Positions 2,179 to 60,908 of a stretch of DNA of 64,000 bases are shown here, piece by piece (within the stretch, counting starts at the first letter, position 1; every line of letters begins with the position of its first letter). Under the pieces are notes generated by a model. That model had not been told where the DNA came from. It did no database searches and saw nothing but the letters and a program-made list of their open reading frames with translations. The stretch spans positions 124,001 through 188,000 of IMG/VR virus record IMGVR_UViG_3300002835_000007; one strand, given 5' to 3'. The translations under genes were made by a program, and so were the position numbers.

Positions 2179-2213
2179 ATTTTTTTACAATATTTATAAT
2201 TAAATATAATAAA

Positions 2214-2459
2214 ATGGCAAAAATAAATGAAGTACATAGTGTAATAGTTCCAGCTAATGCTGCCAATTTAACAGCACATACTTATTCTGAATTGTATGGT
2301 GGCCCTTCTGGTTGTTCTATTGTTTTGAATGGATTAACTATGAATATGGGTGGTGCATCAAGTATTTATATAAACATAAATTCTGTAAGTGGCGGTACTG
2401 GATGTTACTTACTAGGTGTTAATAAAGATGTTATATTAGGTAGTACATCTTTTAAATAA
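2214..2459 (+). CDS. Hypothetical protein, possibly virion-associated
   Basis: 81 aa ORF preceded by TATTTATA at 2191. Confidence 0.65.
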   Translation: MAKINEVHSVIVPANAANLTAHTYSELYGGPSGCSIVLNGLTMNMGGASSIYININSVSGGTGCYLLGVNKDVILGSTSFK

Positions 2460-2475
2460 AAAACAAATTAAACAT

Positions 2476-3570
2476 ATGAAAAATAAAAATTTAATCAATC
2501 CAATTGGTCTTAAAGGTAACGAAATTCATGAGCGTCAATTAGCACTTATGGGTATTAAACCTTTGAATGAAAATGAAAATAAATCTAACCATGCTGTTGA
2601 ATTAACTAAAGTTGGTCCAGATGGTAATGCTTATGCTATCGTTAGAGAAAACCATGAATATTACATCAAAAAAACTGACAAAACAACTGGTTTAGTTTTA
2701 GAAGATTTCAAATATATTGGTGGTCTACAAAACAAAAAATCTGAAGCTTATCCTTCATATGCTAAAGCAATCAAACAATTAAATTTAAAATTCAAATCAT
2801 TATCTGAATCTTATAACAGAGGTGGTGATATTAACGTATTTGAAGATGATAATTTATTAGAACACCACACTGGTATGAAAGATAACGCTTCATTAAGTGC
2901 TACTAAAGGTGTTGGTGACAATACAGAATATATTGTTGATAAAGCTGGTACTCCGTTATCCAACAAAGCTAAAGAAGGTAAAGAAGAAGGTCAATTCGGT
3001 GACAATGTTGCTGATAAAGATGCTGCTGATGAATTTGAAAAAGTAAACGTTAGCGAAGCATTTGGTATGGGCTTTACTGGTGAAGGTAATTTACATGGGA
3101 ATAAAGCATACATGGGTGATGACATGGAAATGACTGAAGAAGAGATGGCTATTCAAGAAATAATAGATAGAATGGCAGAAGAAGAAAAAGAATACTCTGA
3201 TAAACAAAAAGATTTAGCTGCTTTAGGTGGTGACCCAACAAAAATTGATGGTGAAGATTTCGCTAAATTAAGAGGTGGGGTTGAGTTGGAAGAAATTACA
3301 GTGTCTTCAAGTCAAGTTCATGACTCAATGAGTGTAAATGCATTAGAAAAAGTATTAGATTATTATAGAGATTTATACCGTAATTCTAACGGTAATGAAA
3401 ACATTAAAAATTTAATGGATGACACAGAAGGTAAGTTAAGAGTTTTAAAAACACCAACTACGTCTTCAGTTAAAACAGATGTTGGTCCTTATGGTCATAG
3501 TTTAGAAGAATCTATCAATAGATTAGATACACTTTTAGATGGTGAATTAAAAAAAAAAGCACTAAAGTAA
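2476..3570 (+). CDS. Acidic hypothetical protein; N-terminal part of a putative frameshift fusion
   Basis: 364 aa ORF ending ELKKKALK* across an A10 run. Confidence 0.75.
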   Translation: MKNKNLINPIGLKGNEIHERQLALMGIKPLNENENKSNHAVELTKVGPDGNAYAIVRENHEYYIKKTDKTTGLVLEDFKYIGGLQNKKSEAYPSYAKAIKQLNLKFKSLSESYNRGGDINVFEDDNLLEHHTGMKDNASLSATKGVGDNTEYIVDKAGTPLSNKAKEGKEEGQFGDNVADKDAADEFEKVNVSEAFGMGFTGEGNLHGNKAYMGDDMEMTEEEMAIQEIIDRMAEEEKEYSDKQKDLAALGGDPTKIDGEDFAKLRGGVELEEITVSSSQVHDSMSVNALEKVLDYYRDLYRNSNGNENIKNLMDDTEGKLRVLKTPTTSSVKTDVGPYGHSLEESINRLDTLLDGELKKKALK

Positions 3571-5207
3571 ACGAAGATACAAAATACAAGCTGAAAGTTG
3601 ATGCTCCAGCAGCACCAGCTCCAGCTGAACCTATTTCCGAACCAGCTGATGAGGCTGGTTTTGGTGATTTTGGTAGTGAGGAAGAACCAGTAAAAGACGA
3701 TAAGCCATTTGATGATGAGCCTTTTGACGCTGGTGTTGAAGCTGACGAAGATACCGACCCAAAAAAATTCATTCAACAACTTTCTGGAAAATTAGGTGAA
3801 GCACTTAGAGGTTATACAAAAGAACAAGGTAAACCAGATTTTGAGTTAGAAAAGTTTGCAATTAATTCAGTTATTTCAGCAACAAACACTGCTGAAATGG
3901 ATGAAGAAGATAGAAAAGATATAATCAAAAAAATTAATACATCTGGTGATGATGGTGAAGATAATGAAGATATTAATGCTGATAATCAAGATGATTCCAG
4001 CGATGATTCTGGCGACTTTGGCGATTTCGGTGATGACACTGGTGGTGGCATGCCAGATGATACTGCTGATGATGAAGAAGGGTTACAAGAACTTTCAATC
4101 TATGAAAACTTATTCTTAGATGAACCAAAAAGAAATGAAATGTTTCAACCAAAATCTAATGATTACATGTTTGAAGATGGTGGTTGTTGGCATAATGCTG
4201 AAAGAGTACCTGGAACTAAAAAAGGTGCAAAAGGTTCTTGTAGATTAAAAAAGTTAGAAGAATCTGAAGGTTTATGGGCTAACATACACGCTAAACATGA
4301 TAGAGGTGAAGCACCAGCAAAACCAGGTGATAAAGGTTATCCAGACAAAAAAACATGGGATGAATTAACAGAAACACATGAAAATATGGAAGGTGAAGAA
4401 TCACCTACTAGATATATGTTTTTCAGTAATTTAGAGCAAATGAGAAGACAAGCTGGTTTGATGTTAGATTTAGATGAAGGTAAAATTGAGGCAATATTAA
4501 ATAGTGGTCATGATTGGGCTGCTGACCATATTGCTGAAGCAAAAAACAACATGGACCAAGTGTTTGATTTCTTAATGAATGAGACTAAAAGTGGTGATGC
4601 ATGGAAATCTGTTGATATGGAAGACCATGAAGATGCATTGGAATACGATGGTTCTACTGAAGGTGGTTACGAAGATGATTATGGTTCAGTTGAGAATATT
4701 AATTTGAATGAAGCCGAATATCAAGGTAGAAAAGTTAAATTAGGAAAACCAACCAAAGGTGATTCTAAAAAATTCAAAGTTTACGTTAAAAACAGTAAAG
4801 GTAATGTTGTTAAAGTTAATTTTGGTGACCCTAAAATGGAAATCAAAAGAGATAACCCAAAAAACAAAAAATCATTTAGAGCTAGACATAAATGTTCACA
4901 AGCTAAAGATAGAACAACACCTAAATATTGGTCTTGTAAAATGTGGTCATCAACTCCAGTTTCAAAAATTGTTGGTGAAGACTTGAAAGAATCGATAAAA
5001 AGTAGTATATTTGATAAAAAATATCTAACTATGAAAATTCAAGAAACTTTTAATCATGCAGAGCCAATGGTTGAACCACAAGTTAAACCACAAGTTAAAC
5101 CTAACCCAAGTGAAGTTAAACCTAATGATTTACCTAGCAGAAGAAACAAACCGTATACTATTGAACCTAATACGTTGCCAAAAACAGACCCAAAAGCAAG
5201 TAAATAA
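3546..5207 (+). CDS. -1 frame continuation (includes track ORF 3897-5207); acidic modular putative head protein
   Basis: Frame is open from TGA 3543-3545 to 5207; 3558-3896 reads STKVNEDTKYKLKVDAPAAPAPAEP...DPKKFIQQLSGKLGEALR...EKFAINSVISA with no ATG; C-part has basic Cys/Trp module KVNFGDPKMEIKRDNP..KSFRARHKC...YWSCKMW. Confidence 0.7.
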   Translation: MKKKSTKVNEDTKYKLKVDAPAAPAPAEPISEPADEAGFGDFGSEEEPVKDDKPFDDEPFDAGVEADEDTDPKKFIQQLSGKLGEALRGYTKEQGKPDFELEKFAINSVISATNTAEMDEEDRKDIIKKINTSGDDGEDNEDINADNQDDSSDDSGDFGDFGDDTGGGMPDDTADDEEGLQELSIYENLFLDEPKRNEMFQPKSNDYMFEDGGCWHNAERVPGTKKGAKGSCRLKKLEESEGLWANIHAKHDRGEAPAKPGDKGYPDKKTWDELTETHENMEGEESPTRYMFFSNLEQMRRQAGLMLDLDEGKIEAILNSGHDWAADHIAEAKNNMDQVFDFLMNETKSGDAWKSVDMEDHEDALEYDGSTEGGYEDDYGSVENINLNEAEYQGRKVKLGKPTKGDSKKFKVYVKNSKGNVVKVNFGDPKMEIKRDNPKNKKSFRARHKCSQAKDRTTPKYWSCKMWSSTPVSKIVGEDLKESIKSSIFDKKYLTMKIQETFNHAEPMVEPQVKPQVKPNPSEVKPNDLPSRRNKPYTIEPNTLPKTDPKASK

Positions 5208-6251: not shown

Positions 6252-6273
6252 TAAAGTTATAATAAATAAGTAA

Positions 6274-7578: not shown

Positions 7579-7601
7579 ATTAAACTAACATAAAATAATA
7601 G

Positions 7602-7626
7602 TAAGGGCCCTTAGTTAGGGCCCTTA
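7602..7626 (+). terminator. Hairpin / double palindrome, likely terminator
   Basis: TAAGGGCCC TTAGTTA GGGCCCTTA followed by TTTATTT. Confidence 0.7.
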
Positions 7627-7689
7627 TTTATTTATAATAAACGATTTTGTTTAGTTTGAACATATTTATTAATAAATTGAATTAATTTT

Positions 7690-9456: not shown

Positions 9457-9467
9457 AAATTATAACA

Positions 9468-9707: not shown

Positions 9708-9754
9708 CTATTTAATTTATTAAAGATTTAAGTATATTTAAAGAAAAAGAAAAG

Positions 9755-11785: not shown

Positions 11786-11826
11786 TATTTATGATTATAA
11801 CAGCATATTTATAATAAAACATTAAA

Positions 11827-12624
11827 ATGGGTAAAATAGACATTACAAAAACAGTTCAGAATTTTGGTAAACTTAAAAACGTATATAATGATATATTAGT
11901 TGAAAGCGTAGTTACAAAGGATAAAGATAAAAAAACTTTATTTAAAGATTACGTTAGAACCATCAAAGAAAACGTCATATTAAAGAATCAATTTTTAATA
12001 TATAATCTTATTGAAAATAAAGTTGAGAGTAATGAATTAAAAGCTAAAGTATTTTTAGATGAGTGTTTAGATATTATGTCTAAATTCAAAAAGAAAGATA
12101 TTATGGAAGCTAACAGTGCGTTATTAACAAATATTTTATTTGAAAATGATAATGATTATGATAAAAAAGAATTACATGAAAATTTATCATTTTTAATTTT
12201 CACAGATAAAACACCAAAGAACATTAATAAGATTATTGATTCAAAAGATTTTATCGTAAATTATATTTTAAATAATAAAGAAAAAGAAATTAAAGAATCT
12301 TTTAATTTACCAAATAGTTTATTAACTAACTTAATGGTTGAAAAATATAATGAAAGATATTCTGAACTTGAGGAATCTGATAAAAAAATTATTAAAGCTT
12401 TAATTGGTTCAGATGACGAAGAAAAGAAAACAGTTTATACAGAAACACTTAGAGAATGTATAACAATGATTGATGAAAAATTAACTGAATCTGATTTGGA
12501 CACTAAAGATAAATTGTTAAAAGTTAAAGATAAATTATTAAGAGATAAAATTGAAATTAATGAAGATTATGTTAAAAACATAAGCAAATTAGTTGATTTA
12601 AAGAATAGTTTAAAGACAAGGTAG
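11827..12624 (+). CDS. Hypothetical helical protein in head module
   Basis: 265 aa ORF after TATTTATA at 11806. Confidence 0.8.
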   Translation: MGKIDITKTVQNFGKLKNVYNDILVESVVTKDKDKKTLFKDYVRTIKENVILKNQFLIYNLIENKVESNELKAKVFLDECLDIMSKFKKKDIMEANSALLTNILFENDNDYDKKELHENLSFLIFTDKTPKNINKIIDSKDFIVNYILNNKEKEIKESFNLPNSLLTNLMVEKYNERYSELEESDKKIIKALIGSDDEEKKTVYTETLRECITMIDEKLTESDLDTKDKLLKVKDKLLRDKIEINEDYVKNISKLVDLKNSLKTR

Positions 12625-12653
12625 TTGACTTATTCCAGGATTTTTCATATAAT
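12625..12653 (+). promoter_or_regulatory. sigma70-type promoter
   Basis: TTGACT-17 nt-TATAAT, 14 nt before ATG 12668. Confidence 0.75.
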
Positions 12654-12667
12654 TAAATAAAAAATAT

Positions 12668-13105
12668 ATGAAGACTGGAAAAGAAATTAAAAACAACAAT
12701 TTTAAAAATTACAATATCACATATGGTACTGTAAACAATAAGAACCCAAAATCAATCTACTTAAATATTTCATCGTGGCTCGAACCGATAAAAGATGAAA
12801 CGAACAATTATAGTTTTGATATTAGGTCTTTAAATAAAAAAATAAAACAAACGTTATTTAACTATTTAGATGCTAATAAAACAATCTTTAACAAAGATAG
12901 AACAATTGTTGATTTAGATATAAGGGAATCTGGTATAAAGTTAGGTAAAAGAAGTTTTATGAATTGCGAAGTAACCTTTTTTATGAAAGAAGCTTTATCC
13001 ATCAATTCAATTGAAATTACAAACACCGTTGATGAACTGACCGATTTAATGTTCGCAACATTTGAAACAAACAAATCATTTAAATTTAATAAGAAAAAAA
13101 ATTAA
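12668..13105 (+). CDS. Hypothetical protein
   Basis: 145 aa ORF with its own promoter and terminator. Confidence 0.75.
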   Translation: MKTGKEIKNNNFKNYNITYGTVNNKNPKSIYLNISSWLEPIKDETNNYSFDIRSLNKKIKQTLFNYLDANKTIFNKDRTIVDLDIRESGIKLGKRSFMNCEVTFFMKEALSINSIEITNTVDELTDLMFATFETNKSFKFNKKKN

Positions 13106-13107
13106 AT

Positions 13108-13131
13108 AAAGCCCCGTTTGGGGCTTTTTTT
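13108..13131 (+). terminator. Intrinsic terminator
   Basis: AAAGCCCC GTTT GGGGCTTTTTTT. Confidence 0.85.
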
Positions 13132-13169
13132 ATTAATAGAATATATTTATATCTATAAGCAACTAAATT

Positions 13170-13892
13170 ATGGATATAAATTATAAAGACTTTAAAATAT
13201 TAAAACGTGGTGAAAGCGGTTGGGGTGGACTAATTGAACACGATGCTGGATACATTAGTCCAGATGAACCTAGAAACCATCCTTTCATTAACGAAATCAA
13301 AAAATTAGAATCTGGCAAAGTTGTTATTGCAGAGCCTCTTATCGTTTATGTCGTATTACAAAAATTCGGTGTCTTAAATAGAAATGGTAGAGTTTATCCA
13401 GAAGTAGTTCTAAAAAGTCAAGACAAACTTTATCAAGAAGCAATTCGTGAACGCAGAGCTGTAGGTGAATTAGACCACCCAGAAAGTTCTATTATTGCTG
13501 GTGATAGAATTTCACACAATATTATTGAAACATGGTGGGAAGGTCATACTCTTATGGGTAAGATGGAAATCATAATGAGCCCAGGTTTTATTAACTATGG
13601 AATTATATCATGTAAAGGTGATGATGTTGCCAACATGTTAAGAAATAGAATTAAAATCGGTGTTTCTTCTCGTGGCGTTGGTTCACTTAAAGAAGGTAAA
13701 AATGGTGAGCAAATAGTTCAAGACGATTTTGAAATAATTTGTTGGGACGTTGTAACAGCACCTAGTACACCAGGTTCATGGATGGGAACGTCAATAGAAG
13801 AATTAAAACCTTACGTTGAGAACGAAGTAAAAACCAAGCCTTTGTTAAAAGAAAACTTAATAGATGATTTAGATAAATTTTTATCTGAATAA
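13170..13892 (+). CDS. Prohead core protease (T4 gp21-like)
   Basis: NRNGRVYP, GELDHP, SHNI, GVSSRGVGS, DF.I..WD.V..PS.PG. Confidence 0.93.
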   Translation: MDINYKDFKILKRGESGWGGLIEHDAGYISPDEPRNHPFINEIKKLESGKVVIAEPLIVYVVLQKFGVLNRNGRVYPEVVLKSQDKLYQEAIRERRAVGELDHPESSIIAGDRISHNIIETWWEGHTLMGKMEIIMSPGFINYGIISCKGDDVANMLRNRIKIGVSSRGVGSLKEGKNGEQIVQDDFEIICWDVVTAPSTPGSWMGTSIEELKPYVENEVKTKPLLKENLIDDLDKFLSE

Positions 13893-13901
13893 TTTTTTTT
13901 T

Positions 13902-13924
13902 TGCGAAAAAAAGGTTTTTTCGCA
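13902..13924 (+). terminator. Hairpin between protease and scaffold genes
   Basis: TGCGAAAAAA AGG TTTTTTCGCA inverted repeat. Confidence 0.45.
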
Positions 13925-13999
13925 CTAACACACATATTTATAAACAAATGAGGTAAAATCTTATTACTAAATTAATTTTTAAAATTAAAAATATTAAAA

Positions 14000-15271
14000 A
14001 TGGCAGAAAAAAAATCAATACTAGAAGAAGCATTATTAGATATTAAAAATATCGAAAACGCTCTTAATGCTAACACAAAAGAAATACTTCGTTCTGTAGC
14101 GAAAGAAGAAATTGATAGTGTTGTGAAAGAATCTTTAGATGAAGAGATTTATGAAGAAGAAACTTTAGAAGAAGCATCTCACGCTGAGCATGAAAAATCT
14201 GAATCGAAAGAAAAAGAAAAAGCTGAGCATGAAAAAGGTGAAGAAGCTAAAGAGAAAAAAGAAGTTACTGAAGCCTATGAAGAAGAAGGTCTAGACATGA
14301 ATATGGAAGACGAAGTAGAAATGGGTGTTGAGGCACCAGAGGTAACCAATATGGTTGGAAGTAGCGATGAAGAAATTTTTGACATGTACAAGAAAATAAC
14401 ATCTCAAGATGGTTTTGAAATTGTTGGTGATGAAGTTCACATTAACATTACTGAACCAGGTGAGTATATCATTAAGTTAGATTCTTTAAAAGATGTTGAA
14501 AATGACGAAGAAGATTTTGGTTCTGATGAATTTGCTAGTGATGATTCTGATGAAGAAGATTTAACAGTTATTGGTGGTGATGATTCTGAAGAAGAAGAAG
14601 ACACTGAATATAACATTGAGTTAGACGATGAAGATTCTGAAGAAGAAGAAGAAGATGAAGAAGGTGGTGAAGAAGATGAGGAAGAAACAAACCTTATTGC
14701 TGCTAATGATGATTCTGAAGAAGAAGATGAATTAGATGAAAGTCAAGCTCTTGCTCATGCTCATGGTAAAAAATACAGCGGTGGCCGTACTTTAGCACCA
14801 GAATCTGAAAAGGAATCTTTACAAGAAGTTCAAAAAGCTAGACAAATCGTTTCTGAAACAGCAAAAAAATATAACAGCTTATTAACTGAGGCTAAAAAAT
14901 TAAAAACTGAGAATCAAGAATTCAGAACAGCTCTTAAAGAATTTAGAACAAAGTTAGTTGAGACTGTAGTGTTCAATTCAAACTTGACTTATATTACAAG
15001 ATTGTTTACTGAGCATTCAACAACTAAAGCTGAAAAACAAAGTATTTTAAAAAGATTTGACCAAGCAAGTAACTTAGTAGAATCTAAAAAATTATACAAA
15101 GTGATTTCTAATGAATTGGAAACAAGAAAACCAATCACTGAATCGCTAGAAAACAAATTAATAAAGGAATCAACTACAAGTACTTCAAAACAATTAAATG
15201 AAAGTACTGCTTATGTTGACCCTTCAACTCAAAGGATTAAAGATTTAATCAACAGAGTTGAAAAAAGATAA
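14000..15271 (+). CDS. Prohead scaffold/core-like protein
   Basis: Very acidic, coiled-coil C-terminus, lies between protease and MCP (position of T4 gp22). Confidence 0.7.
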   Translation: MAEKKSILEEALLDIKNIENALNANTKEILRSVAKEEIDSVVKESLDEEIYEEETLEEASHAEHEKSESKEKEKAEHEKGEEAKEKKEVTEAYEEEGLDMNMEDEVEMGVEAPEVTNMVGSSDEEIFDMYKKITSQDGFEIVGDEVHINITEPGEYIIKLDSLKDVENDEEDFGSDEFASDDSDEEDLTVIGGDDSEEEEDTEYNIELDDEDSEEEEEDEEGGEEDEEETNLIAANDDSEEEDELDESQALAHAHGKKYSGGRTLAPESEKESLQEVQKARQIVSETAKKYNSLLTEAKKLKTENQEFRTALKEFRTKLVETVVFNSNLTYITRLFTEHSTTKAEKQSILKRFDQASNLVESKKLYKVISNELETRKPITESLENKLIKESTTSTSKQLNESTAYVDPSTQRIKDLINRVEKR

Positions 15272-15303
15272 TAACATTAAATAACAATAAATAAAAAACA
15301 ATT

Positions 15304-17130
15304 ATGTCACATTTATTAACATCTGGACAAGTAGGTAACATCGGATTAAACCACATGAAAGCTATCCGTTTGGAAACTCAAAACAAATGGGAATCATTAG
15401 GATTCTTAGAGGGTCTTAGAGGCCACGTAAAAGAAAACATCGCTCAGTTATATGAAAACCAAGCGTCTTCATTATTAACTGAAACTACGACAGCAACAAA
15501 CTCTGGTTCTTTCGAAACTGTAGTTTTCCCTATCGTAAGAAGAGTTTTCTCTAAATTATTAGCTAACGATATCGTATCTGTACAAGCTATGAACATGCCA
15601 ATTGGTAAATTGTTCTTCTTTGTTCCACAAACATCTTCAAGAGTTGATTCTGCTGGTAATAAAGGTTCTGCTTATGATACTGATACTTACACTAACTCTC
15701 AGTACTCTGCTCACACTTCATTTGCAAACACTGGTATGCCATCATGTGTATTACCAGCTGCTGGAACATGTGTTGCTACAGTAATGGAAGCTAAAAACTT
15801 ATATGATATTTTCTATAACGATGGTTTATTTGACAACTCTAAAGGTACTTTAACTATTAGAACTCATACTAACGTTAGTAAATTATCTTTAGGTGCTAAT
15901 GGTGAATTCTCTGGATTAGCTGCTGCTGGTACTTTAGCTACTGCTACTGATGGTTCAGTTAGAGAAATTATCGTTGGTGTTTCTGGTTTCTCACCAAACA
16001 ACACTAACAAAGCGGTTATGACTGGTGCTGACGGTAACGATATGGATACTGAGTCTTTCTTAGCTTCATTAAACGTTGTTACTACAGCTAACATCTACGA
16101 TAAAGATGGTAACGTTGTTGTTTCAACTAACAAATCTGTACCATTCAGATTAGTAACTCAAAAATATGGTAAAGGAATTGTAGATTATACATCAATTACA
16201 GATGCTACTGGTACTGTATACTTAGCTTTAGATTTAAGCCACCCAGTTGGAACAACTGCTGCTGGTTCTGCTGCTGCTGGTACAGCTACTTATGATGGTT
16301 ATGTTGGTGCTTCTGCAACTACTGTATCTGCATTCACATTCAACGCTGCTTGGGCTGAGTATGCAACATTAGAACTTGAAACTGAAATGGGAGAAGTATC
16401 TTTCAAATTAGATGAAGTTGTTGTATCTGTTGAAGAAAGAAAATTAAGAGCTACTTGGTCTCCAGAGTTAGCACAAGACGTTAGTGCATTCCACAACATC
16501 GATGCTGAAGCTGAGTTAACTGCAATGTTATCTGAACAAGTTGCTGCTGAGATTGACCGTGAAATCTTGAGAGATATCCGTAAAGCTGCTGCATGGCAAT
16601 TAAGATGGGATTACAACGGATGGAGAAAAGCTTCTTCTGCTGCATCACCATATACTCAAAAAGAGTGGAACCAAACTTTAATTACTAAATTAAACCAAAT
16701 CTCTGCTCAAATCCACAAATCTACGTTAAGAGGTGGTGCTAACTTCATCGTGGTATCTTCTGAGATATCTGCAATCTTTGATGATTTAGAATACTTCCAC
16801 GTATCTGATGCTAACCCAGAGCAAGACCAATACAACATGGGTATTGAAAGAATCGGTTCTTTAAGCGGACGTTACCAAGTGTACCGTGACCCTTATGCAC
16901 CAGCTTACTCTATCATCATTGGTCACAAAGGAAAATCATTGTTAGACACTGGTTATATCTACGCACCATACGTGCCGTTACAATTAACTCCAACAATGTA
17001 CAACCCTTTCAACTTTGCTCCAGTGAAAGGTATCATGACACGTTACGCTAAGAAAGTAGTAAACAATCGTTTCTACGGACACTTGAGAGTTGACGGTGTA
17101 ATGACATTCAACCCTAACGAATTAAGATAG
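15304..17130 (+). CDS. Major capsid protein (T4 gp23-like)
   Basis: VRRVF..LLA.DIVSVQAM..P.G..F, RKLRATWSPELAQD..AFH.IDAEAEL, EIDREI, G..YAPYVPL, GIMTRY. Confidence 0.96.
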   Translation: MSHLLTSGQVGNIGLNHMKAIRLETQNKWESLGFLEGLRGHVKENIAQLYENQASSLLTETTTATNSGSFETVVFPIVRRVFSKLLANDIVSVQAMNMPIGKLFFFVPQTSSRVDSAGNKGSAYDTDTYTNSQYSAHTSFANTGMPSCVLPAAGTCVATVMEAKNLYDIFYNDGLFDNSKGTLTIRTHTNVSKLSLGANGEFSGLAAAGTLATATDGSVREIIVGVSGFSPNNTNKAVMTGADGNDMDTESFLASLNVVTTANIYDKDGNVVVSTNKSVPFRLVTQKYGKGIVDYTSITDATGTVYLALDLSHPVGTTAAGSAAAGTATYDGYVGASATTVSAFTFNAAWAEYATLELETEMGEVSFKLDEVVVSVEERKLRATWSPELAQDVSAFHNIDAEAELTAMLSEQVAAEIDREILRDIRKAAAWQLRWDYNGWRKASSAASPYTQKEWNQTLITKLNQISAQIHKSTLRGGANFIVVSSEISAIFDDLEYFHVSDANPEQDQYNMGIERIGSLSGRYQVYRDPYAPAYSIIIGHKGKSLLDTGYIYAPYVPLQLTPTMYNPFNFAPVKGIMTRYAKKVVNNRFYGHLRVDGVMTFNPNELR

Positions 17131-17151
17131 TCTTAATTTAACATAAAACTT

Positions 17152-17181
17152 AAAAGCTCTACAGAAATGTGGAGCTTTTTT
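17152..17181 (+). terminator. Intrinsic terminator after MCP
   Basis: AAAAGCTCTACA GAAA TGTGGAGCTTTTT. Confidence 0.9.
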
Positions 17182-17215
17182 GTTTTATAGGAATATTTAT
17201 TAATAAAAATAACAT

Positions 17216-17914
17216 ATGAGAAGATTTGATAAAGACAAAAATATTCAAAAAGCTAATCTATTAGCTGAGCAAAGATATCTAGTATCTAAGGGTTTGATTG
17301 TTGAGATTACTAGTAGTGATGAAGAAACAATAGATGTTTTAAAAAAGTTAATTGCTAATATTAAAAATAAAAGTGAATTATCTATTTACGATAAAGCCTC
17401 ATTAGACGCATGGGAAACCACATTAAGACGAGTAATTTCAAGTAAGGAAGAAGCTGAATTTCATGCACGAAGTTCTAATAGTAATTCTAATAAAAATATT
17501 GAAACTAAACCTTTAGAACGCACAGATTTAATTAACTTATTTACAACAGCATTAGAAGGTGGTTCTAATTATTGGTATTATATTAAACATCTACCTAAAG
17601 ATGTTAAGTATGATATTCAACATATGGGTGTACATGGTAGTAAAGCAATTAGTAAATTTTTATTAGGTGGAGGTAAAATGTATTTCTATGATAAAGATGA
17701 GAATATTGGTGATGATTCTGATGATGGATATGAATATATGAATGAAAAGGGTTATTTGGGTTATGTTGATATTGATAAAATATTAGATGCTATTAATTTA
17801 TTAAAAAATGAATATAGTGAAATACATTATAGAATTTTAAATGGCCAGTTTGATGCAGATGACGCAGACGTATTTTTACAATTATGTGTAATGGGAAAAG
17901 TTAAATACGGTTAA
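17216..17914 (+). CDS. Hypothetical protein
   Basis: 232 aa ORF after TATTTAT at 17194; C-terminal LEGGSNYW...DADDADVFLQLCVMGKVKYG. Confidence 0.75.
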   Translation: MRRFDKDKNIQKANLLAEQRYLVSKGLIVEITSSDEETIDVLKKLIANIKNKSELSIYDKASLDAWETTLRRVISSKEEAEFHARSSNSNSNKNIETKPLERTDLINLFTTALEGGSNYWYYIKHLPKDVKYDIQHMGVHGSKAISKFLLGGGKMYFYDKDENIGDDSDDGYEYMNEKGYLGYVDIDKILDAINLLKNEYSEIHYRILNGQFDADDADVFLQLCVMGKVKYG

Positions 17915-17943
17915 TTTTATTAATATAAAACTAAGTGAAATAA

Positions 17944-18099
17944 TTATTGTTTATCTATTTCTTCTTTAAATTCTTTAACCACTTCTGGTAAATTAAGGAA
18001 GTAACTTCTAACACGTTTACCTAAATCCATATCATTTGGATTTTCTTTAACTAAATTTTTAATGTCAGTTAACGCTGCTTCTACTAATTCTAATTTCAT
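17944..18099 (-). CDS. Small hypothetical protein (51 aa, not in ORF track)
   Basis: MKLELVEAALTDIKNLVKENPNDMDLGKRVRSYFLNLPEVVKEFKEEIDKQ*, A-rich leader. Confidence 0.65.
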   Translation of the reverse strand: MKLELVEAALTDIKNLVKENPNDMDLGKRVRSYFLNLPEVVKEFKEEIDKQ

Positions 18100-18166: not shown

Positions 18167-18194
18167 AATTTATGTGTTAACTCGTTAATTTATT

Positions 18195-19064: not shown

Positions 19065-19090
19065 TTTAATTAACTTTTAATTTTTGTTAT

Positions 19091-19151
19091 TATTGTACCG
19101 ATACCTTTGCTGCCTTGACAGCTCTAAACCATTTCTGGTCGGGACCAATAC
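19091..19151 (-). ncRNA. Candidate structured 5' leader RNA
   Basis: GC-rich island in an AT-rich intergenic region with three predicted stems. Confidence 0.4.
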
Positions 19152-19190
19152 GTGAGTTAACACATTTATAAATATAGTGAAAAAATGTTT

Positions 19191-20922: not shown

Positions 20923-20952
20923 TTGTTTTTTATTAATAAATATCTTAAAATA

Positions 20953-24060: not shown

Positions 24061-24453
24061 TTAAAATAATTCATTGTCGTTATTTTCGTTCAACCCACCA
24101 TTTTTAATCATTTCTCTAATTGATTTATAATCATTTAATGATGCACTGCCTTGGCTTCGTTCATTAATAGTTGATTCAACGTCACCACGATTTTTAATTA
24201 TATCACTTTGTAATTTAGCGATTTCTAATTTAATTCTGATTGCTGAGTCTTTTACTTTTAGTAAACTACCTTTTTCTTTTGCTATTTTAGTTAAATCATC
24301 AACGTCTACTGGAGAAGCACTAGCTGCTAATTCATTGATAGTTTTTTGAGCGTCATTTATTTGTAAACATGCGTCATTATAAGTTTCTTGCATTAAACCT
24401 TCTAATGATTCTGTATCGTTAACTTTTACGTCTTGTTTCTTTTTTCTAGGCAT
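24061..24453 (-). CDS. Hypothetical coiled-coil protein
   Basis: 130 aa ORF; TATTTATA about 43 nt upstream. Confidence 0.7.
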   Translation of the reverse strand: MPRKKKQDVKVNDTESLEGLMQETYNDACLQINDAQKTINELAASASPVDVDDLTKIAKEKGSLLKVKDSAIRIKLEIAKLQSDIIKNRGDVESTINERSQGSASLNDYKSIREMIKNGGLNENNDNELF

Positions 24454-24527: not shown

Positions 24528-25253
24528 CTATAAACCATAGTTTTTTAAAACTTCATAAAGTAGTTTATAACGTTTCATTCCAATCCTAATATCTTTAGTT
24601 GATAAATTGGTGTAATTCCTCATAGTTTCTAAGAAAGAATTCTTATTATATTTAGACCCTCCTTCCATTGAAGAGAAGACTAATTCCCAATTTTCTAAAA
24701 TATCTATTAACGCATAACCAATTTTAATTTCATTTTCATTTAATTTTTTCTTATGGTTATTTTCGCTTTCTAATTCTGTTTTAATTTCACCGACTAATTT
24801 TTTAATGAAGTCACCCATTTCAACACTATCTCTATCGATAACGTATGTCAAATCTTCCCTTTCTTCGATGCTATCGTTTAATTCTTCGTAAGATGTTGTT
24901 TGTCTAATATATTTTTCATCTTTGATTAGTAACCCTAAAATATAGTGTTTACTAATTGTTCCAAAATATGAATAAGCTTTTTTGCCTCTACCACTTTCAA
25001 ATTTGTGTACTTTTGTCATTAGGAAAGATAAAGTGTCGCTATGCAACTCTTCAAATGTCTCACCCTTTCTATACAACTTGTACTTTCTAATTATCGACTC
25101 TATCATTTTATCGAGTGGCCCTTTAAGCCACTCGTTAAAAATTAGATTCCTTTCTGTTTCGTCTGTTGATTCTAAAAATTTGATTACTGCTTCTTCTTCT
25201 TCTGGACCAAAGTACATTTCGTTTGTTCTTTTTCGTCCTCGTTTTGTAACCAT
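24528..25253 (-). CDS. Putative RNA polymerase sigma factor (gp55/sigma70 region 2-like)
   Basis: EELHSDTLSFLMTKVHKFESGRGKKAYSYFGTISKHY resembles sigma region 2. Confidence 0.55.
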   Translation of the reverse strand: MVTKRGRKRTNEMYFGPEEEEAVIKFLESTDETERNLIFNEWLKGPLDKMIESIIRKYKLYRKGETFEELHSDTLSFLMTKVHKFESGRGKKAYSYFGTISKHYILGLLIKDEKYIRQTTSYEELNDSIEEREDLTYVIDRDSVEMGDFIKKLVGEIKTELESENNHKKKLNENEIKIGYALIDILENWELVFSSMEGGSKYNKNSFLETMRNYTNLSTKDIRIGMKRYKLLYEVLKNYGL

Positions 25254-52710: not shown

Positions 52711-52746
52711 TATTTATAAATATATTCATTTCTTTTAATATTTATA
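52711..52746. promoter_or_regulatory. Divergent promoter region
   Basis: Palindromic TATTTATAAATA at 52711-52722 plus TATTTATA at 52739. Confidence 0.55.
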
Positions 52747-52760
52747 ATAAAAAGAATAAA

Positions 52761-55700
52761 ATGAGTGGATTTAGAACAAAATTAGATTTTTCAGACAATA
52801 GACAAGCAAAACAAAGACCTATAACTAGAACAGTTTTATCTGGTGGTACGTCATTTGGTTTACCTTTTAATTTGTTACCTAGTGGACCAAATTTAACAAC
52901 TAGTGCTATTACTGGAAATTATACTTATATAGCAAGTACGTTTTCTGGTAATAATACAACAACAGTTTATAATTGGTCAGACCCAAGAATGCAATTAGGT
53001 GTTTCAGCTTTATCTGCGTTAACTTCATCAACATCTGGTTTAACACAAAATACTGGTGCTGTTTGGACACCTAATACAACAACAGTAATCGATGGGAACA
53101 CAGTTGCTTTGACTTATTCTGGTGTTAATTTTGACATTTCAGTAGTAACAATAGCACAATTAACTCCATCAACATATAGTGGTACTATAACAACAAATAA
53201 CTTTGATGTTTATACTGCTTCAACGTTAGATTATACTGGTAGAACAATATGGGTTGATGTTTCTGGTATAACTAGAACTGAAAAATTAATAATTTCAGAT
53301 AATCCACAAGTTGGATATGTTTGGACTTGTTTGGATTCAGAAGGTATGGGTGGTTGGGTTTTTAATTCAAGTGCCACAACAGCAACAATATGGACTGCTG
53401 GTACTGGTGCTAATTCAGCTGTATTAGGTGGTTCTAATGGTATTGCCAGTGGTTCTACTTCTGTATCTGAAGGTGTTAATACAAGAGCTGGTGGTATAGC
53501 TTCACACGCTGAAGGTGGTGGTACACAAGCGTTAGGTGATTTGTCTCATGCTGAAGGTGAAGATACAATAGCTAGTAATACAGCAGCACATGCTGAAGGT
53601 GTTAATACAATTGCAAGTGGTGTTTATTCACATGCTGAAGGTAGTAATACAATAGCTAGTAATGCTAGAAGTCATGCTGAAGGTTATTTATCAATAGCAA
53701 GTGGTGTTGTTTCTCACGCTGAAGGTGAGAGTACAACCGCAAGTGGTGGTAATTCGCATGCTGAAGGTCATAGTACAATAGCGAGTGGAAATACATCACA
53801 TGCTGAAGGTGGTAATACGGTAGCTGGTGGTGGTTATTCACATGCTGAAGGAAAAGATACAATAGCTAGTGGTTATAGAAGTCATGCTGAAGGTAATATT
53901 ACTATTGCAAGTGGTGATACATCACATGCTGAGGGTTCTGGTTCGATAGCTGGTGGTGATAGTTCGCATGCCGAAGGTTCTAATACAATAGCTTCTGCGT
54001 CTCAATCACATGCTGAAGGTTCTAGTACAATCGCAAGTGGTTCTACATCACACGCTGAGGGTCAAAATACAATAGCTGGTGGTAGTGTATCTCACGCTGA
54101 AGGTAGTGGTACAATAGCTAGTGGGTTTGCATCCCATGCTGAGGGTAGTGACACAATAGCGTATGGTACAAATTCACACGCTGGTGGTTATAGTTCACGT
54201 ACTGACAGTAATTATAGTTTTATTCATTCGAATCAATCAGTTATATCTAGTGGGGGTGAAAACAGTTATATTTTAGGTGGTAAAGAGAATTATATAGAAT
54301 TATCCGATTATTCTGGTATTTTAGGTGGTAGATATAATATTTTAGGTATAGCTCAACCAGGTTTTAACGCAAATGCTGAAAATTCTTTTATTGGTGGTGG
54401 TTATTCCAATATTATTTATGAGGCAACAAATAACTCAACAATATTGGGTGGTAGAGAGAATGAAATACATAAATATAGTAATGACTCAGCTATAGTTGGT
54501 GGTCGTAATAATGAGATATCTGGTGGTTCGATTAGTTCTGGTATTTTTGTTGGTACTGGTAATACAATATCTAATATTTCTAAATACGCTGCAATCATTG
54601 CTGGTCGAAACAATACAATTTCTGGTCACTCAAATTCAGTAATAGTTGGAGGTTTTAATAACTTTATTGATTTCTGTTTAAATAACTATGGTGATTCATC
54701 TAATGAATCTATAATTGGTGGTGCTAATAATTCAATTTATGTTGCTGATAATTCATTTATTGCTGGTGGTAATAATAACTTAATTGATGGTAGAACAGCT
54801 GGTATAGGTAGTGTTAGTAGTTTTATACTAGGTGGTGTGAATTGTTCTGCTTTTACTAGTGTTCGTTCTGGTATAATTGGTGGTCTTAATAATAGTATAA
54901 AACCTTCTTATTGTAGTTATGTTTCAAGTTCAATTATTATTGGTGGTGAGGAAAATGAATATAATCCTAGTACCAGTCTTATTAGTGGTAGTGGTGCTAG
55001 AGTTACAATTATTGGTGGGTATCAAAATAAAGTAACTGGTGAAGGTGTTTCTGATGTTTCAATATTTGGTGGATATAAGAATCTTTATACTAGTCATGTT
55101 GGTAATGGTGGCAATGCTAATACTATTGTAGGTGGGTCTGGGAATACTATGAATAGTAGGTCCACTTATTTTGGTCAAGACATATCTTATGCTAGTATTT
55201 TAGGTGGTGCTGGAAATAATATATCTTCTGATGTTAGTGTTGCTTCAGTATTACAATTATCTAGTTATTCTAATATAACTGGTGGTTTTGAAAACACTAT
55301 AACTGGTAGTTCTAATTCGTTTATTGGTGGTGGTACTGGAAATGTTATTAAAGACGCTGCAAATGATTCAGTAATATTAGGTGGTAAACTAAACAGTATC
55401 GAAAGAGGATTTGCTAATTATGCTACTACTATTAGTTCAGCAATAATTGCTGGGTCTGGTAATACAATTAATGGTCATTTTTATTCAGCTATATTGGCTG
55501 GTATGGGTAATACTATACATTTTGATTTAGCTGGAACTGAAGGAAAGAGTAATGAAACTATTTTAGGTGGTGCTTTTAATACTATATCTGCATCAACATC
55601 TTCTAGTATCGTTGGAGGGACATATAATGAAATACAAAATTACACTTCGTCAATTATTTTAGGTGGATTACGTAATAGATTGCTTGATTTTAGTACTGAC

Positions 55701-59491: not shown

Positions 59492-59555
59492 TTAATTAAT
59501 AATTGAATATGCTATACAAAGTAAAATTTTATCATATTTATTAAAAAACGTAAAA

Positions 59556-60872
59556 ATGTTAAATAAAAAAATAAATCAATTTTCTGCGGATACAGCTATT
59601 CAAGGTACTGAATTAATCCTAATAATGGATTCTGGGACAACCAAAAATATGGTTGTTGATGACTTAAAAGAGTATGTGTTAAGTGGTGCGACAGATGTGT
59701 TCGTAACTGGTGGTACTTATTCTAATAGTACCATTACATTTAGTAACAATACTGGTGGAACATTTAGTGTTTCTGGTATTAGCAGTAGTTCAAATATTTC
59801 TGATTCAATTTATACTGTTAATGATAATTTAAATGCCAATAATACAACAACCGCAACTACATCTGTTATGGTTTATGGTGTTAATGTGTTTACTGGTGTA
59901 ACATCAACTAATTATGCAACTAAATTGCCGCAACCAGTTACTGGAAAAAGTGTAAAAGTAATTAATAATGGTTCTACATTATTACATATATTTCCTTCTA
60001 ATATTGGTGGTCAAGTAAATAATTTACCAATAAACACACCAGCGGTTATACCACCAGATGGTAATTTATATGAATTCATTTGTATTAAGAATCCATTACC
60101 AGGTGCGTGGACGTTTTCAACACCAGCAACTGGTCAATATGATAGTGGTGAAATAACAATTTCAATTAGTGCATTAACTAAAAGTGGGTCCAATCCAGTG
60201 ATAACTGCATATAATTCTAATTATGTTGGGGCTGGTCCTAATTTTAATAGTACTAATTGGGGTTACGATGGTAAAAATAAATCAGCTATTTTAAGTAGTT
60301 ATTATAATGGTGATTATTATTTAGCATTCAGACCAGAAACACCATGGAAAGGTATTAGTAAGATTAAAATTTATACTAATTTAATTGATAGTAATAGAAC
60401 AAGAAGTACTTTAGCTAGGGTAGCGGCTGGTGGTGAATCTGATTATTATTCACCATATGATGGTTCTATATTAAATACTAGACTTGGTGCGGCTAATGGT
60501 GAATTACTTAGAGTGTATACGAATAAAGTTATATCTGGTGTTGCCGTATCTGCCAGTACAATATACACATCAGCAAATATCGGGGACGCTGGGACATTAT
60601 GGGGTGAAAAAGTAGCTAATACTGATTCATATTCAAATGTTAGTTTAGGTACTGAAGGTGGTACATTTATAGGGAATAAACCATTAAACTCTACAGCTTA
60701 TCCTTATTATCAAACTTGGGATATTTCTGATAATGAAATAAACACTGGTGATATTGTTGATGTATTTTATTCGTCTTATATTTCATTTCAAATACAACCA
60801 TTTGCTTACGACTTTAATTATGGTACAATACCAGATTTTAAATTCAGATTTATAATCGAATACTACCAATAA
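59556..60872 (+). CDS. Putative tail fibre-associated protein
   Basis: KKINQF...I.GTELILI.DSGTTK; DVFVTGGTY module. Confidence 0.6.
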   Translation: MLNKKINQFSADTAIQGTELILIMDSGTTKNMVVDDLKEYVLSGATDVFVTGGTYSNSTITFSNNTGGTFSVSGISSSSNISDSIYTVNDNLNANNTTTATTSVMVYGVNVFTGVTSTNYATKLPQPVTGKSVKVINNGSTLLHIFPSNIGGQVNNLPINTPAVIPPDGNLYEFICIKNPLPGAWTFSTPATGQYDSGEITISISALTKSGSNPVITAYNSNYVGAGPNFNSTNWGYDGKNKSAILSSYYNGDYYLAFRPETPWKGISKIKIYTNLIDSNRTRSTLARVAAGGESDYYSPYDGSILNTRLGAANGELLRVYTNKVISGVAVSASTIYTSANIGDAGTLWGEKVANTDSYSNVSLGTEGGTFIGNKPLNSTAYPYYQTWDISDNEINTGDIVDVFYSSYISFQIQPFAYDFNYGTIPDFKFRFIIEYYQ

Positions 60873-60908
60873 ACAATAAGTTTAAATATTTATATAAAAA
60901 CTAATAAA

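What the first reader, a model, noticed from the sequence alone, without database searches (positions are those of the whole stretch)
2191..60894. TATTTAT(A) motif upstream of structural genes: the T4 late promoter read backwards
On the coding strand, TATTTAT(A/T) sits ~20-27 nt before the ATG of 2214 (2191), terL (7663), 11827 (11806), protease (13144), 17216 (17194), 52761 (52739), 59556 (59535) and 60909 (60887). The same holds for - strand genes 20922, 29150 and 52700. A TATTTA variant precedes the portal (9735) and a more distant copy precedes the scaffold (13935). The T4 gp55 late promoter is TATAAATA; TATTTATA is its exact reverse complement. No -35 element is evident. This suggests a late promoter class with distinct specificity, possibly read by the sigma-like protein 24528-25253.
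Basis: partly seen in the sequence, partly recalled or inferred. Interest (0 to 1): 0.7.

Follow-up and report, generated by a model that had tools for sequence, protein, structure and literature searches.

The report
Phage late-promoter box TATTTAT(A/T)
A short DNA box, TATTTAT(A/T), sits just upstream of the head, packaging and tail-fibre operons of this large freshwater phage and its many relatives. It is most likely the promoter for a phage-encoded sigma factor distantly related to T4 gp55, so it is a new variant of the T4 late-transcription system rather than a new kind of system.

Summary

- **Genome.** The window is part of a 206-kb T4-superfamily phage contig (GC 30%). Its other promoters are of the Bacteroidota type, which points to a Bacteroidota host.
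- **Placement.** TATTTATW is no commoner in the window than chance (44 found, 40 expected). A matrix trained only on distant relatives gives 12 hits at 14 bits or more. All 12 are intergenic and lie 20-65 nt upstream of a same-strand ATG. Several follow a terminator.
- **Conservation.** The box is the top strand-specific k-mer upstream of genes in 48 divergent relatives. It is also present in Flavobacterium phage immuto and Microcystis phage Mel-JY01.
- **Sigma-like gene.** These two complete genomes gave no match to the standard Pfam sigma region-2 model. Each has one homologue of ORF 24528-25253. That ORF has a sigma region-2 fold (VIA-align Z 10.9 to T4 gp55; hhalign 80% to the gp55 family). 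It is also predicted to bind the Flavobacterium beta' clamp helices.
- **"Read backwards".** This has no mechanistic meaning. In the same orientation the box differs from T4's TATAAATA only at positions 4-5.
- **Not shown.** No transcription start site was mapped. Late timing and the identity of the sigma factor are inferred.

Novelty: new variant of a known kind.

The parts
2191..2198 (+). TATTTATA box, 23 nt before the ATG at 2214. It follows the terminator hairpin at 2152-2176.
   Evidence: 14.4 bits
7663..7670 (+). TATTTATT box, 27 nt before the terL ATG at 7690. It follows the terminator at 7600-7628.
   Evidence: 15.7 bits
11806..11813 (+). TATTTATA box, 21 nt before the ATG at 11827. 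A weaker tandem copy, TATTTATG, sits at 11786.
   Evidence: 16.9 and 11.3 bits
13144..13151 (+). TATTTATA box, 26 nt before the prohead protease ATG at 13170. It follows the terminator at 13108-13127.
   Evidence: RNA contigs appear from 13186 and none lie over 12600-13136.
13935..13942 (+). TATTTATA box, 65 nt before the ATG at 14000. This is the likely promoter of the scaffold-MCP operon; MCP has no box of its own.
   Evidence: 14.9 bits. A metatranscriptome contig begins at 13960, and there is no RNA coverage over 13776-13959.
17194..17201 (+). TATTTATT box, 22 nt before the ATG at 17216. It follows the MCP terminator at 17152-17179.
   Evidence: 17.1 bits. The same terminator-box-ATG layout is found after MCP in 49 of 69 distinct relatives.
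20935..20942 (-). TATTTATT box, 20 nt before the ATG at 20922.
   Evidence: 18.5 bits
24489..24496 (-). TATTTATA box, 43 nt before the ATG at 24453, directly downstream of the sigma-like gene.
   Evidence: 14.2 bits
29163..29170 (-). TATTTATA box, 20 nt before the PhoH ATG at 29150. It heads the - strand run of genes that includes the sigma-like ORF.
   Evidence: 14.8 bits
52715..52722 (-). TATTTATA box, 22 nt before the ATG at 52700. It heads the block 52700-29214 and forms a back-to-back divergent pair with the box at 52739.
   Evidence: 17.4 bits
52739..52746 (+). TATTTATA box, 22 nt before the ATG at 52761 (1611-aa tail-fibre-like protein).
   Evidence: 17.2 bits
59535..59542 (+). TATTTATT box, 21 nt before the ATG at 59556.
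   Evidence: 15.5 bits
60887..60894 (+). TATTTATA box, 22 nt before the ATG at 60909 (ORF of more than 1030 aa, read here as fibre-like from its translation; no family search was run; it runs off the window).
   Evidence: 16.3 bits
9735..9741 (+). TATTTAA variant, 20 nt before the portal ATG at 9755. Doubtful: it is degenerate in close relatives, though a true TATTTAT occurs there in more distant ones.
24528..25253 (-). Sigma-like gene (241 aa). It has an N-terminal sigma region-2 domain (residues about 14-119) and a helical C-terminal half. It is the proposed reader of the box.

Best explanation
(A)TATTTAT(A/T) is the -10-like core of a phage-specific promoter class.

- **What it drives.** The packaging, head and tail-fibre operons, plus two long - strand gene blocks.
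- **Proposed mechanism.** Host RNA polymerase core carries the phage sigma-like protein encoded at 24528-25253. That protein's sigma-2 domain would dock on the beta' clamp helices and recognise the box on the non-template strand, with no -35 contact.
- **Predicted start site.** Transcription would start at an A about 5-6 nt after the last T of TATTTAT. That gives leaders of roughly 8-15 nt in this phage, and apparently leaderless mRNAs in many relatives.
- **Relation to T4.** The system is a diverged counterpart of T4 gp55 with TATAAATA. The two central bases of the box have changed (AA to TT). The protein has an extra C-terminal domain in place of gp55's sliding-clamp-binding tail.

Shown here: the placement, strand bias and conservation of the box; its co-occurrence with the sigma-like family; and the sigma fold.

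Inferred: that the box is a promoter, the start site, late timing, and which sigma reads it.
For: **1. Placement.**
- All 12 hits at 14 bits or more, from a matrix trained on relatives only, are intergenic and within 70 nt upstream of a same-strand ATG. Intergenic DNA is 3.5% of the window.
- 12 of 68 genes carry the box against 1.5 expected.
- Genome-wide, ATATTTAT occurs in 35 upstream regions on the sense strand, against 7.4 in shuffles and 11 antisense.

**2. Transcription-unit layout.**
- The boxes at 2191, 7663, 13144 and 17194 each follow a strong terminator hairpin.
- The box precedes first genes of runs, not every gene.

**3. It is not a host promoter.**
- Genome regions 3.7-104 kb use classic Bacteroidota TTTG-N19-21-TAnnTTTG promoters. 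The window has none in an upstream position.
- Sigma-70-type -35/-10 matches are at chance level (101 found, 100.8 expected).

**4. Conservation.**
- In 80 loci with 57-96% MCP identity, 276 of 823 upstream regions carry the exact 8-mer on the sense strand, against 37 antisense.
- It is the top de novo k-mer in the 48 most divergent loci (166 found, 14.4 expected).
- After MCP, the layout terminator, box, ATG persists even where the downstream gene differs.
- It is present in Flavobacterium phage immuto (16 of 58 genes) and Microcystis phage Mel-JY01 (10 of 36). In Mel-JY01 it lies 40-44 nt from the ATG with a GGAG between them, so it is not part of a translation signal.
- It is also present where the sigma homologue is only 32% identical.

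**5. The sigma-like protein.**
- Pfam Sigma70_r2 matches 23 of 64 family members.
- The family profile hits SigA region 2 in PDB (E 0.01) and gp55 (E 0.31).
- hhalign against a gp55 family profile gives 79.9% probability, E 1.4e-5, collinear over 139 columns.
- The AlphaFold model has pLDDT 90.8. Foldseek hits are almost all sigma factors. VIA-align gives Z 10.9 to gp55 chain 7d7c_F, with 118 of 137 residues aligned.
- In the predicted complex with F. johnsoniae beta' residues 1-420, ipSAE is 0.78 against a best control of 0.00. That mark was reached by 58 of 80 solved complexes and 2 of 110 mismatched pairs. The runs agree in at least 83% of contacts and partner pLDDT is at least 71. The interface lies on beta' 272-319, which I take to be the clamp helices.

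**6. Co-occurrence.** The complete immuto and Mel-JY01 genomes gave no match to Pfam Sigma70_r2 (PF04542) or to PF00562, the multisubunit RNA polymerase second-largest-subunit domain. Each has exactly one full-length member of this family.

**7. Geometry.**
- The distance from box to ATG is bimodal: 12-14 nt or 19 nt and more, with almost nothing at 15-18.
- Many unrelated genes in relatives read TATTTAT-N4/5-ATG. This fits a start site at the conserved A triplet 12-14 nt from the leading A.

**8. Pocket residues.** In the hhalign register, gp55 residues L54, R57, F86 and Y97 map to I54, K57, F85 and Y96. Residues H95 (contacts base -9) and T99 (contacts base -8) map to Y94 and G98. The box differs from T4's at -10 and -9. 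This is inference.

**9. RNA.** A lake metatranscriptome contig starts at 13960, 18 nt after the box at 13935-13942. No RNA coverage crosses the box.
Against: - No transcription start site or time course exists. The RNA evidence is a few short assembled contigs at 88-97% identity, and gaps in such data prove nothing.
- The sequence link to gp55 is weak with a single sequence (45%) and moderate with profiles (80%). Z values of 9-11 are within the range helical folds can reach by chance.
- The beta' complex score may only reflect likeness to solved sigma complexes, and the true host is unknown.
- This phage has two other, canonical sigma genes outside the window that could read the box here.
- The sigma-like gene itself sits behind a box-type promoter with no host-type promoter nearby. 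How the first sigma is made is therefore unexplained.
- The sigma-like protein lacks gp55's SLDFLY-type clamp-binding tail. No gp45-type clamp was found, although that search is insensitive.
- A T-tract 14-17 nt upstream of the box could be a second element or just the terminator tails of related sites.
Confidence: 0.6

Rival explanations
1. The box is a promoter, but a different sigma reads it. Candidates are one of the phage's two canonical sigma factors (286-aa group-1-like, genome 52858-53718; 180-aa ECF type, genome 34877-35419) or a host alternative sigma. ORF 24528-25253 would then have another role.
For: Both extra sigma genes pass Pfam thresholds with regions 2 and 4. The 241-aa protein falls below the Pfam cut-off on its own. 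Its gene lies behind a box-type promoter, which is awkward for the factor that must start the cascade.
Against: The complete immuto and Mel-JY01 genomes carry the box but have no match to Pfam Sigma70_r2 at all, only the 241-aa family homologue. The box is the same in phages of Bacteroidota and of a cyanobacterium, which argues against a host-specific sigma.
Confidence: 0.15
2. The box is the binding site of a phage transcription activator or repressor that overlaps a weak core promoter. It would be an operator, not the -10 element itself.
For: Its position near the start of transcription units fits either role. No direct protein-DNA data exist.
Against: No other conserved promoter element lies nearby. 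The box is asymmetric and strictly strand-specific. The recurrent TATTTAT-N4/5-ATG geometry matches -10-to-start spacing. It resembles the T4 -10-like box at 6 of 8 positions.
Confidence: 0.1
3. The box acts at the RNA level, as an endonuclease processing site or an A/U-rich translation enhancer for mRNAs that lack a Shine-Dalgarno sequence.
For: In this phage the box sits at a nearly fixed 20-27 nt from the ATG. The genes lack Shine-Dalgarno sequences, as is usual in Bacteroidota (PMC6847099).
Against: In Mel-JY01 the same box lies 40-44 nt upstream with a separate GGAG. It occurs at operon heads after terminators, not before every gene. In many relatives the ATG is only 4-5 nt after the box, leaving no room for a leader element. 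RNA coverage is absent across the box at 13935.
Confidence: 0.06
4. The pattern is a chance product of AT-rich intergenic DNA.
For: The total count in the window equals the shuffled expectation (44 against 40). Intergenic DNA is about 80% A+T.
Against: An AT-matched Markov background gives 1.5 genes against 12 observed. The box ranks top among same-composition 8-mers. Sense exceeds antisense by 276 to 37 in relatives. It is conserved at 37% MCP identity and across host phyla.
Confidence: 0.01

Closest known systems
Phage T4 late promoters (TATAAATA) read by gp55 with gp33 and the gp45 sliding clamp
   Same: - An 8-bp TATA-like box on the coding strand, about one helical turn before the start.
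- A/T-rich DNA just downstream and no -35 element (PMC2988020).
- Used for head, packaging and fibre genes of a phage with a gp23-type MCP.
- The A at box position 2 and the A at position 6 are kept. In T4 these are the -12 and -8 bases that gp55 inserts into deep pockets (PMC7892883).
   Different: - The consensus differs at positions 4-5 (TT instead of AA). Described T4-family variants (KVP40, 44RR, S-PM2, Aeh1) keep the AAATA core (PMC2988020).
- The protein is 241 aa with a structured C-terminal half and no SLDFLY-type clamp-binding tail.
- No gp45-type clamp or gp33 was detected, though the test is weak.
- The predicted start is 1-2 nt closer to the box.
Bacteroidota sigma-A promoters (-33 TTTG / -7 TAnnTTTG)
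   Same: Both kinds occur in this genome, at a similar short distance from SD-less start codons.
   Different: The box has no G at position 8 and no -33 TTTG at 19-21 nt. The two motif classes occupy different parts of the genome. The box also occurs in a cyanophage.
Phage-encoded sigma cascades such as Bacillus phage SPO1 gp28 and gp33/34
   Same: Phage sigma-family proteins redirect host core polymerase to phage-specific promoters in temporal classes. This genome carries three sigma-like genes.
   Different: SPO1 sigmas use bipartite -35/-10 promoters (general knowledge). Here only a single -10-like box is conserved.

Membership tests
T4-type late promoter | A single 8-bp TATA-like box at the -10 position, on the coding strand | tested here: inconclusive
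   The box and its strand are shown. Its position relative to the start site is only inferred, from the TATTTAT-N4/5-ATG geometry and the conserved A triplet. No start site was mapped.
T4-type late promoter | Consensus TATAAATA | tested here: not met
   The consensus is (A)TATTTAT(A/T), which matches at 6 of 8 positions in the same orientation. TATAAATA on the sense strand is much rarer upstream of genes (10 against 34 genome-wide).
T4-type late promoter | No conserved -35 element; A/T-rich segment downstream of the box | tested here: met
   No informative positions lie upstream except a T-tract that coincides with terminator tails. Positions +12..+14 are 67-83% A.
T4 gp55 family (late sigma) | Sigma region-2 homology domain related to gp55 | tested here: met
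   hhalign of the two family profiles gives 79.9%, E 1.4e-5 over 139 columns. VIA-align gives Z 10.9 to 7d7c_F. Pfam Sigma70_r2 matches 23 of 64 members.
T4 gp55 family (late sigma) | Hydrophobic C-terminal sliding-clamp-binding motif (SLDFLY in T4) | tested here: not met
   The C-terminus ends ...KNYGL inside a confidently predicted helix (219-240). The family consensus shows no such tail.
T4 late transcription system | gp45-type clamp and gp33 co-activator encoded by the phage | tested here: inconclusive
   PF02916 finds nothing in this contig (58% complete), in immuto or in Mel-JY01. No control genome known to carry the family was included, and gp33 was not searched.
Sigma-70 family | Binds the beta' clamp helices through region 2 | tested here: met
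   This is a prediction only. ipSAE is 0.78 against a best control of 0.00 (mark reached by 58 of 80 solved complexes and 2 of 110 mismatched pairs). The interface lies on beta' 272-319, which I take to be the clamp helices, and on sigma residues 32-44 and 63-83. The runs agree in at least 83% of contacts, and partner pLDDT is at least 71.
Sigma-70 family | Region 4 helix-turn-helix that reads a -35 element | tested here: inconclusive
   No Pfam region-4 hit in 64 members. Whole-chain structural alignments to ECF and group-3 sigmas cover residues 12-241, but at high rmsd. No -35 motif is found in the DNA.
Bacteroidota sigma-A promoter | -7 TAnnTTTG with -33 TTTG | tested here: not met
   The box does not fit the pattern. 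True examples are abundant elsewhere in the genome (72 upstream regions), but none is in an upstream position in the window.

The most novel reading that the evidence does not exclude
The 241-aa protein founds a separate, widespread family of two-domain late sigma factors: 1227 clusters at 50% identity, found on phage contigs of up to 362 kb.
- It would work without the T4 sliding-clamp coupling.
- It would carry its own promoter code, TATTTATW, unchanged across phages of different bacterial phyla (Bacteroidota and Cyanobacteria).
- It would often be paired with leaderless late mRNAs.

Together these would make late gene expression largely independent of host promoter and ribosome-binding rules.
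Probability: 0.3. Interest if true: 0.65.

Novelty: new variant of a known kind. Interest (0 to 1): 0.5.

Why it matters
- **Annotation.** The box gives a simple, testable promoter rule for a very abundant and almost unstudied clade of large freshwater and marine T4-superfamily phages: at least 597 IMG/VR contigs by MCP, and 7743 database proteins for the sigma. It allows operon and late-gene annotation from sequence alone.
- **Specificity.** It offers a natural specificity variant of the gp55 / -10 box interaction. The two central bases differ, and so do the two residues that, in the alignment register, contact that part of the box in T4.
- **Regulation.** It raises the question of whether late transcription here is uncoupled from the replication clamp.
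- **Testability.** Cultured systems exist for direct tests: Flavobacterium phage immuto and Microcystis phage Mel-JY01.

Tried and rejected
- **Whole-window count of TATTTATW:** not enriched. The raw-frequency argument was dropped in favour of position and strand tests.
- **crAss-like phage idea** (low GC, no Shine-Dalgarno sequences): rejected. The MCP is gp23-like and the nearest isolates are T4-superfamily phages.
Pfam PF00562 (second-largest-subunit domain of multisubunit RNA polymerases) finds nothing in this contig, immuto or Mel-JY01. PF00940 (T7-type) finds nothing in this contig, but that search rang in none of its control genomes, so it is uninformative.
- **Standard sigma-70 -35/-10 scan:** at chance level.
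- **Near-identical DNA in the phage collection:** none.
- **PHROGs for the sigma-like ORF:** no hit. Single-sequence PDB search: no useful hit.
- **Huge phage LR756508** (42% MCP identity, only a marginal sigma match): lacks the box. This marks the limit of the clade.
- **Metatranscriptome contigs:** they show the protease-scaffold-MCP region is transcribed in lakes and rivers, but they cannot resolve 5' ends.
- **Ma-LMM01 transcriptome paper:** a different phage with no related motif.
- **Literature searches for TATTTATA or TATTTAT as a phage promoter:** nothing relevant in the held library.
- **The 130-aa neighbour of the sigma gene as a gp33-like co-activator:** no support, only a weak lead to gp16-type small terminase.
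- **Rfam on the window:** no match.
Full report
**What the window is**

The 64-kb window is bases 124001-188000 of a single 205,931-bp virus contig with 30% GC. CheckV puts it at about 58% complete. It encodes a large terminase, portal, prohead protease and a gp23-type major capsid protein.

By MCP, the nearest cultured relatives are:
- Flavobacterium phage vB_FspM_immuto (37% identity);
- Microcystis phage Mel-JY01;
- Rhodothermus phage RM378;
- T4-like cyanophages.

No near-identical DNA is in the phage collection. DNA and RNA runs that hold the sequence come from lakes and rivers. Genes lack Shine-Dalgarno sequences.

Outside the window, 72 upstream regions carry TAnnTTTG, many with a TTTG 19-21 nt upstream, which is the Bacteroidota promoter type. 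They fall into two sub-classes: TACATTTGTA at 3.7-75 kb and TATCTTTGT at 78-104 kb. The host is therefore very probably a freshwater member of the Bacteroidota.

**Checking the observation**

The overall number of TATTTATW in the window is what shuffling predicts (44 against 40). The claim therefore rests on position and strand, and there it holds:
- Twelve of 68 genes carry the box between -45 and -5 on the sense strand. A Markov model of the same AT-rich upstream windows gives 1.5 +/- 1.2.
- ATATTTAT is the most frequent of the 56 eight-mers of the same composition.
- A 20-nt matrix built only from relatives with 68% MCP identity or less finds 12 sites at 14 bits or more on both strands. All 12 are intergenic and within 70 nt upstream of a same-strand ATG. 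Only 3.5% of the window is intergenic.

The motif is best written (A)TATTTAT(A/T), followed by an A-rich triplet 12-14 nt from the leading A. The copies at 2191, 7663, 13144 and 17194 each lie 10-35 nt after a strong terminator hairpin. The box precedes the first gene of a run, not every gene. The 'variant' before the portal is degenerate and is not conserved in close relatives.

**Conservation**

MCP relatives are very numerous: at least 597 IMG/VR contigs.
- In 80 fetched loci, the exact 8-mer lies within 45 nt upstream on the sense strand of 276 of 823 genes that have non-coding upstream DNA. Only 37 carry it antisense.
- In the 48 most divergent loci it is the top k-mer found de novo (166 against 14.4 expected).
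- Downstream of MCP, the layout of stop codon, terminator with a varying stem sequence, box, then ATG recurs in 49 of 69 distinct relatives. This holds even where the downstream gene is different.
- The box, often written (a/c)TATTTATAAATAAA, precedes terL, portal, phoH, the tail sheath and others in phage immuto: 16 of 58 genes, with 17 of 24 strand copies inside 8.3% of the DNA.
- It also precedes terL, portal, the tail tube and others in Microcystis phage Mel-JY01 (10 of 36 genes). There it lies 40-44 nt from the ATG with a GGAG between them.
- Contigs whose sigma homologue is only 32% identical still show it before terL and neighbouring genes.
- The huge phage LR756508 (42% MCP identity, only a marginal sigma match) lacks it.

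A signal that is identical in phages of two bacterial phyla, and independent of the local translation signals, is most simply specified by a phage factor.

**The candidate reader**

ORF 24528-25253 (241 aa) scores just below the Pfam threshold for sigma-70 region 2. The family as a whole is convincing:
- It has 7743 database homologues, many 76-80% identical, on contigs of up to 362 kb. At 50% identity it forms 1227 clusters.
- 23 of 64 diverse members hit Sigma70_r2.
- The family profile hits SigA region 2 and T4 gp55 in PDB.
- Comparison with a gp55 family profile gives 79.9% probability over 139 collinear columns.
- The AlphaFold model is confident (pLDDT 90.8). Foldseek returns almost only sigma factors.
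- VIA-align places gp55 from the T4 late open complex second, at Z 10.9 with 118 of 137 residues aligned. Isolated sigma-2 domains align at 2.6-2.9 A rmsd.
- A predicted complex with residues 1-420 of Flavobacterium johnsoniae beta' scores ipSAE 0.78 against a best control of 0.00. That mark was reached by 58 of 80 solved complexes and 2 of 110 mismatched pairs. The runs agree in at least 83% of contacts and partner pLDDT is at least 71. The interface lies on beta' 272-319, which I take to be the clamp helices, and on the helices equivalent to regions 2.1-2.2. This shows likeness to sigma, not binding.

The complete genomes of immuto and Mel-JY01 gave no match to Pfam Sigma70_r2 (PF04542) or to PF00562, the second-largest-subunit domain of multisubunit RNA polymerases. 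Each has one full-length member of this family. The gene keeps the same neighbours in distant relatives.

**How it probably works**

In T4, gp55 reads TATAAATA at -13 to -6 on the non-template strand. It inserts A-12 and A-8 into deep pockets (Y97, T99) and A-9 into a shallow one (N13, H95) (PMC7892883). The T4 box is followed by A/T-rich DNA and has no -35 partner (PMC2988020).

Aligned in the same orientation, the box here keeps T1, A2, T3, A6, T7 and A8, and changes only positions 4-5 from AA to TT. The fact that it equals the reverse complement follows from the palindromic TAT..ATA frame and carries no mechanistic meaning.

In the hhalign register, gp55 residues L54, R57, F86 and Y97 correspond to I54, K57, F85 and Y96, of which I54 and Y96 are nearly invariant in the family. 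H95 and T99 correspond to Y94 and G98. The changed residues are therefore the ones that in T4 touch the part of the box that has changed. This is an inference from an alignment of moderate confidence.

The start site is estimated from geometry:
- The distance from box to ATG is bimodal: 12-14 nt, or 19 nt and more.
- Many unrelated genes in relatives read TATTTAT, then 4-5 nt, then ATG. That leaves room only for a leaderless mRNA starting at the A of the ATG.
- In promoters with a leader, the same positions hold the conserved A triplet.

The one piece of RNA evidence agrees with this. A lake metatranscriptome contig for the scaffold gene begins at 13960, 18 nt after the box at 13935-13942, and nothing covers 13776-13959. 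The data are sparse assembled contigs, so this is weak support.

**What does not fit, or is open**

- The protein is not simply a gp55. It has a structured C-terminal half and lacks the clamp-binding tail. No gp45-type clamp was found, though that search is insensitive and the contig is incomplete. Coupling to replication may therefore be absent or differently built.
- This phage also has a 286-aa sigma with regions 1.2, 2 and 4 and a 180-aa ECF-type sigma. Their targets are unknown, and they remain possible readers in this genome.
- The sigma-like gene lies in a run of genes headed by a box-type promoter (29170), with no host-type promoter in an upstream position in the window. How expression is first triggered is unexplained.
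- 'Late' is inferred from the genes served: terL, protease, scaffold with MCP, and fibre-like proteins. The box also heads the PhoH-to-sigma run and a 23-kb block whose identified genes are mainly glycosyltransferases. A few copies lie in the host-type promoter region.
- A T-tract 14-17 nt upstream of the box may only be terminator tails shared by related sites.

**Verdict**

The best explanation is a T4-like late promoter class with an altered -10-like box, read by a diverged gp55-related sigma.

No description of this consensus was found in the searchable literature. Known T4-family variants keep the AAATA core. I rate it a new variant of a known kind, of moderate interest.

Noticed in passing
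G000 genome 3.7-104 kb (outside the window): Two sub-classes of Bacteroidota-type promoters in separate genome regions: TACATTTGTA at 3.7-75 kb and TATCTTTGT at 78-104 kb. The second class often has a -33 TTTGG or TTGCA embedded in small inverted repeats. They probably mark early and middle gene classes.
   Followed up: partly
G000 genome 52858-53718 and 34877-35419 (L001:1339-2199, L002:1441-1983): Two further phage sigma genes: a 286-aa protein with regions 1.2, 2 and 4, and a 180-aa ECF-type sigma. The phage therefore carries three sigma-like genes.
   Followed up: partly
window 3546-3570: A run of ten A (3547-3556) lies 12 nt upstream of the stop codon of ORF 2476-3570. The reading frame of ORF 3897-5207 is already open from 3546 in the -1 frame. 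This could be a programmed -1 frameshift or transcriptional slippage fusing the two ORFs, or a homopolymer assembly error.
   Followed up: partly
window 19065-19190, - strand: A 126-nt non-coding gap carries a box copy (19174-19167). It is followed by about 100 nt of relatively GC-rich sequence that folds into a stem structure (z -1.9, weak). A similar word, TGTGTTAACTC, recurs near 18170. This may be a small RNA. There is no tRNA or Rfam match.
   Followed up: partly
window 29214-52700, - strand: A 23-kb run of 34 ORFs behind the single strong box at 52722. Most of the sampled ORFs gave no family match. The identified ones are several glycosyltransferases (GT2, GT4, GT10-like), a HAD hydrolase fusion and a DUF6492 protein. 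This looks like a large glycan-synthesis block rather than classic structural genes.
   Followed up: partly
relatives L005, L007, L029, L043, L044, L047, L050-L057, L060, L061, L066, L072, L076, L080 (just after MCP): The recurrent arrangement TATTTAT, then 4-5 nt, then ATG in front of different genes suggests frequent leaderless late mRNAs in this clade.
   Followed up: partly
window 12600-17950: Lake and river metatranscriptomes contain contigs of the protease, scaffold and especially the MCP gene of this phage and close strains. None covers 12600-13136 or 17075-17950.
   Followed up: yes
window 662-1939: A thymidylate synthase gene (Pfam E 8.5e-92) with an insertion: the match falls in two stretches across 336 residues against a 266-position model.
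   Followed up: no
L091:10700-10745: In a distant relative, the gene just after the sigma homologue is preceded by the T4-type word TATAAATA, 21 nt before the ATG, instead of TATTTAT. This may be chance.
   Followed up: no
window 24061-24453, - strand: The conserved 130-aa helical neighbour of the sigma gene has only a weak feature-based lead to PF11053, a terminase DNA-packaging family (T4 gp16 small terminase, by my recollection; score 0.80). There is no evidence that it is a gp33-like co-activator.
   Followed up: partly
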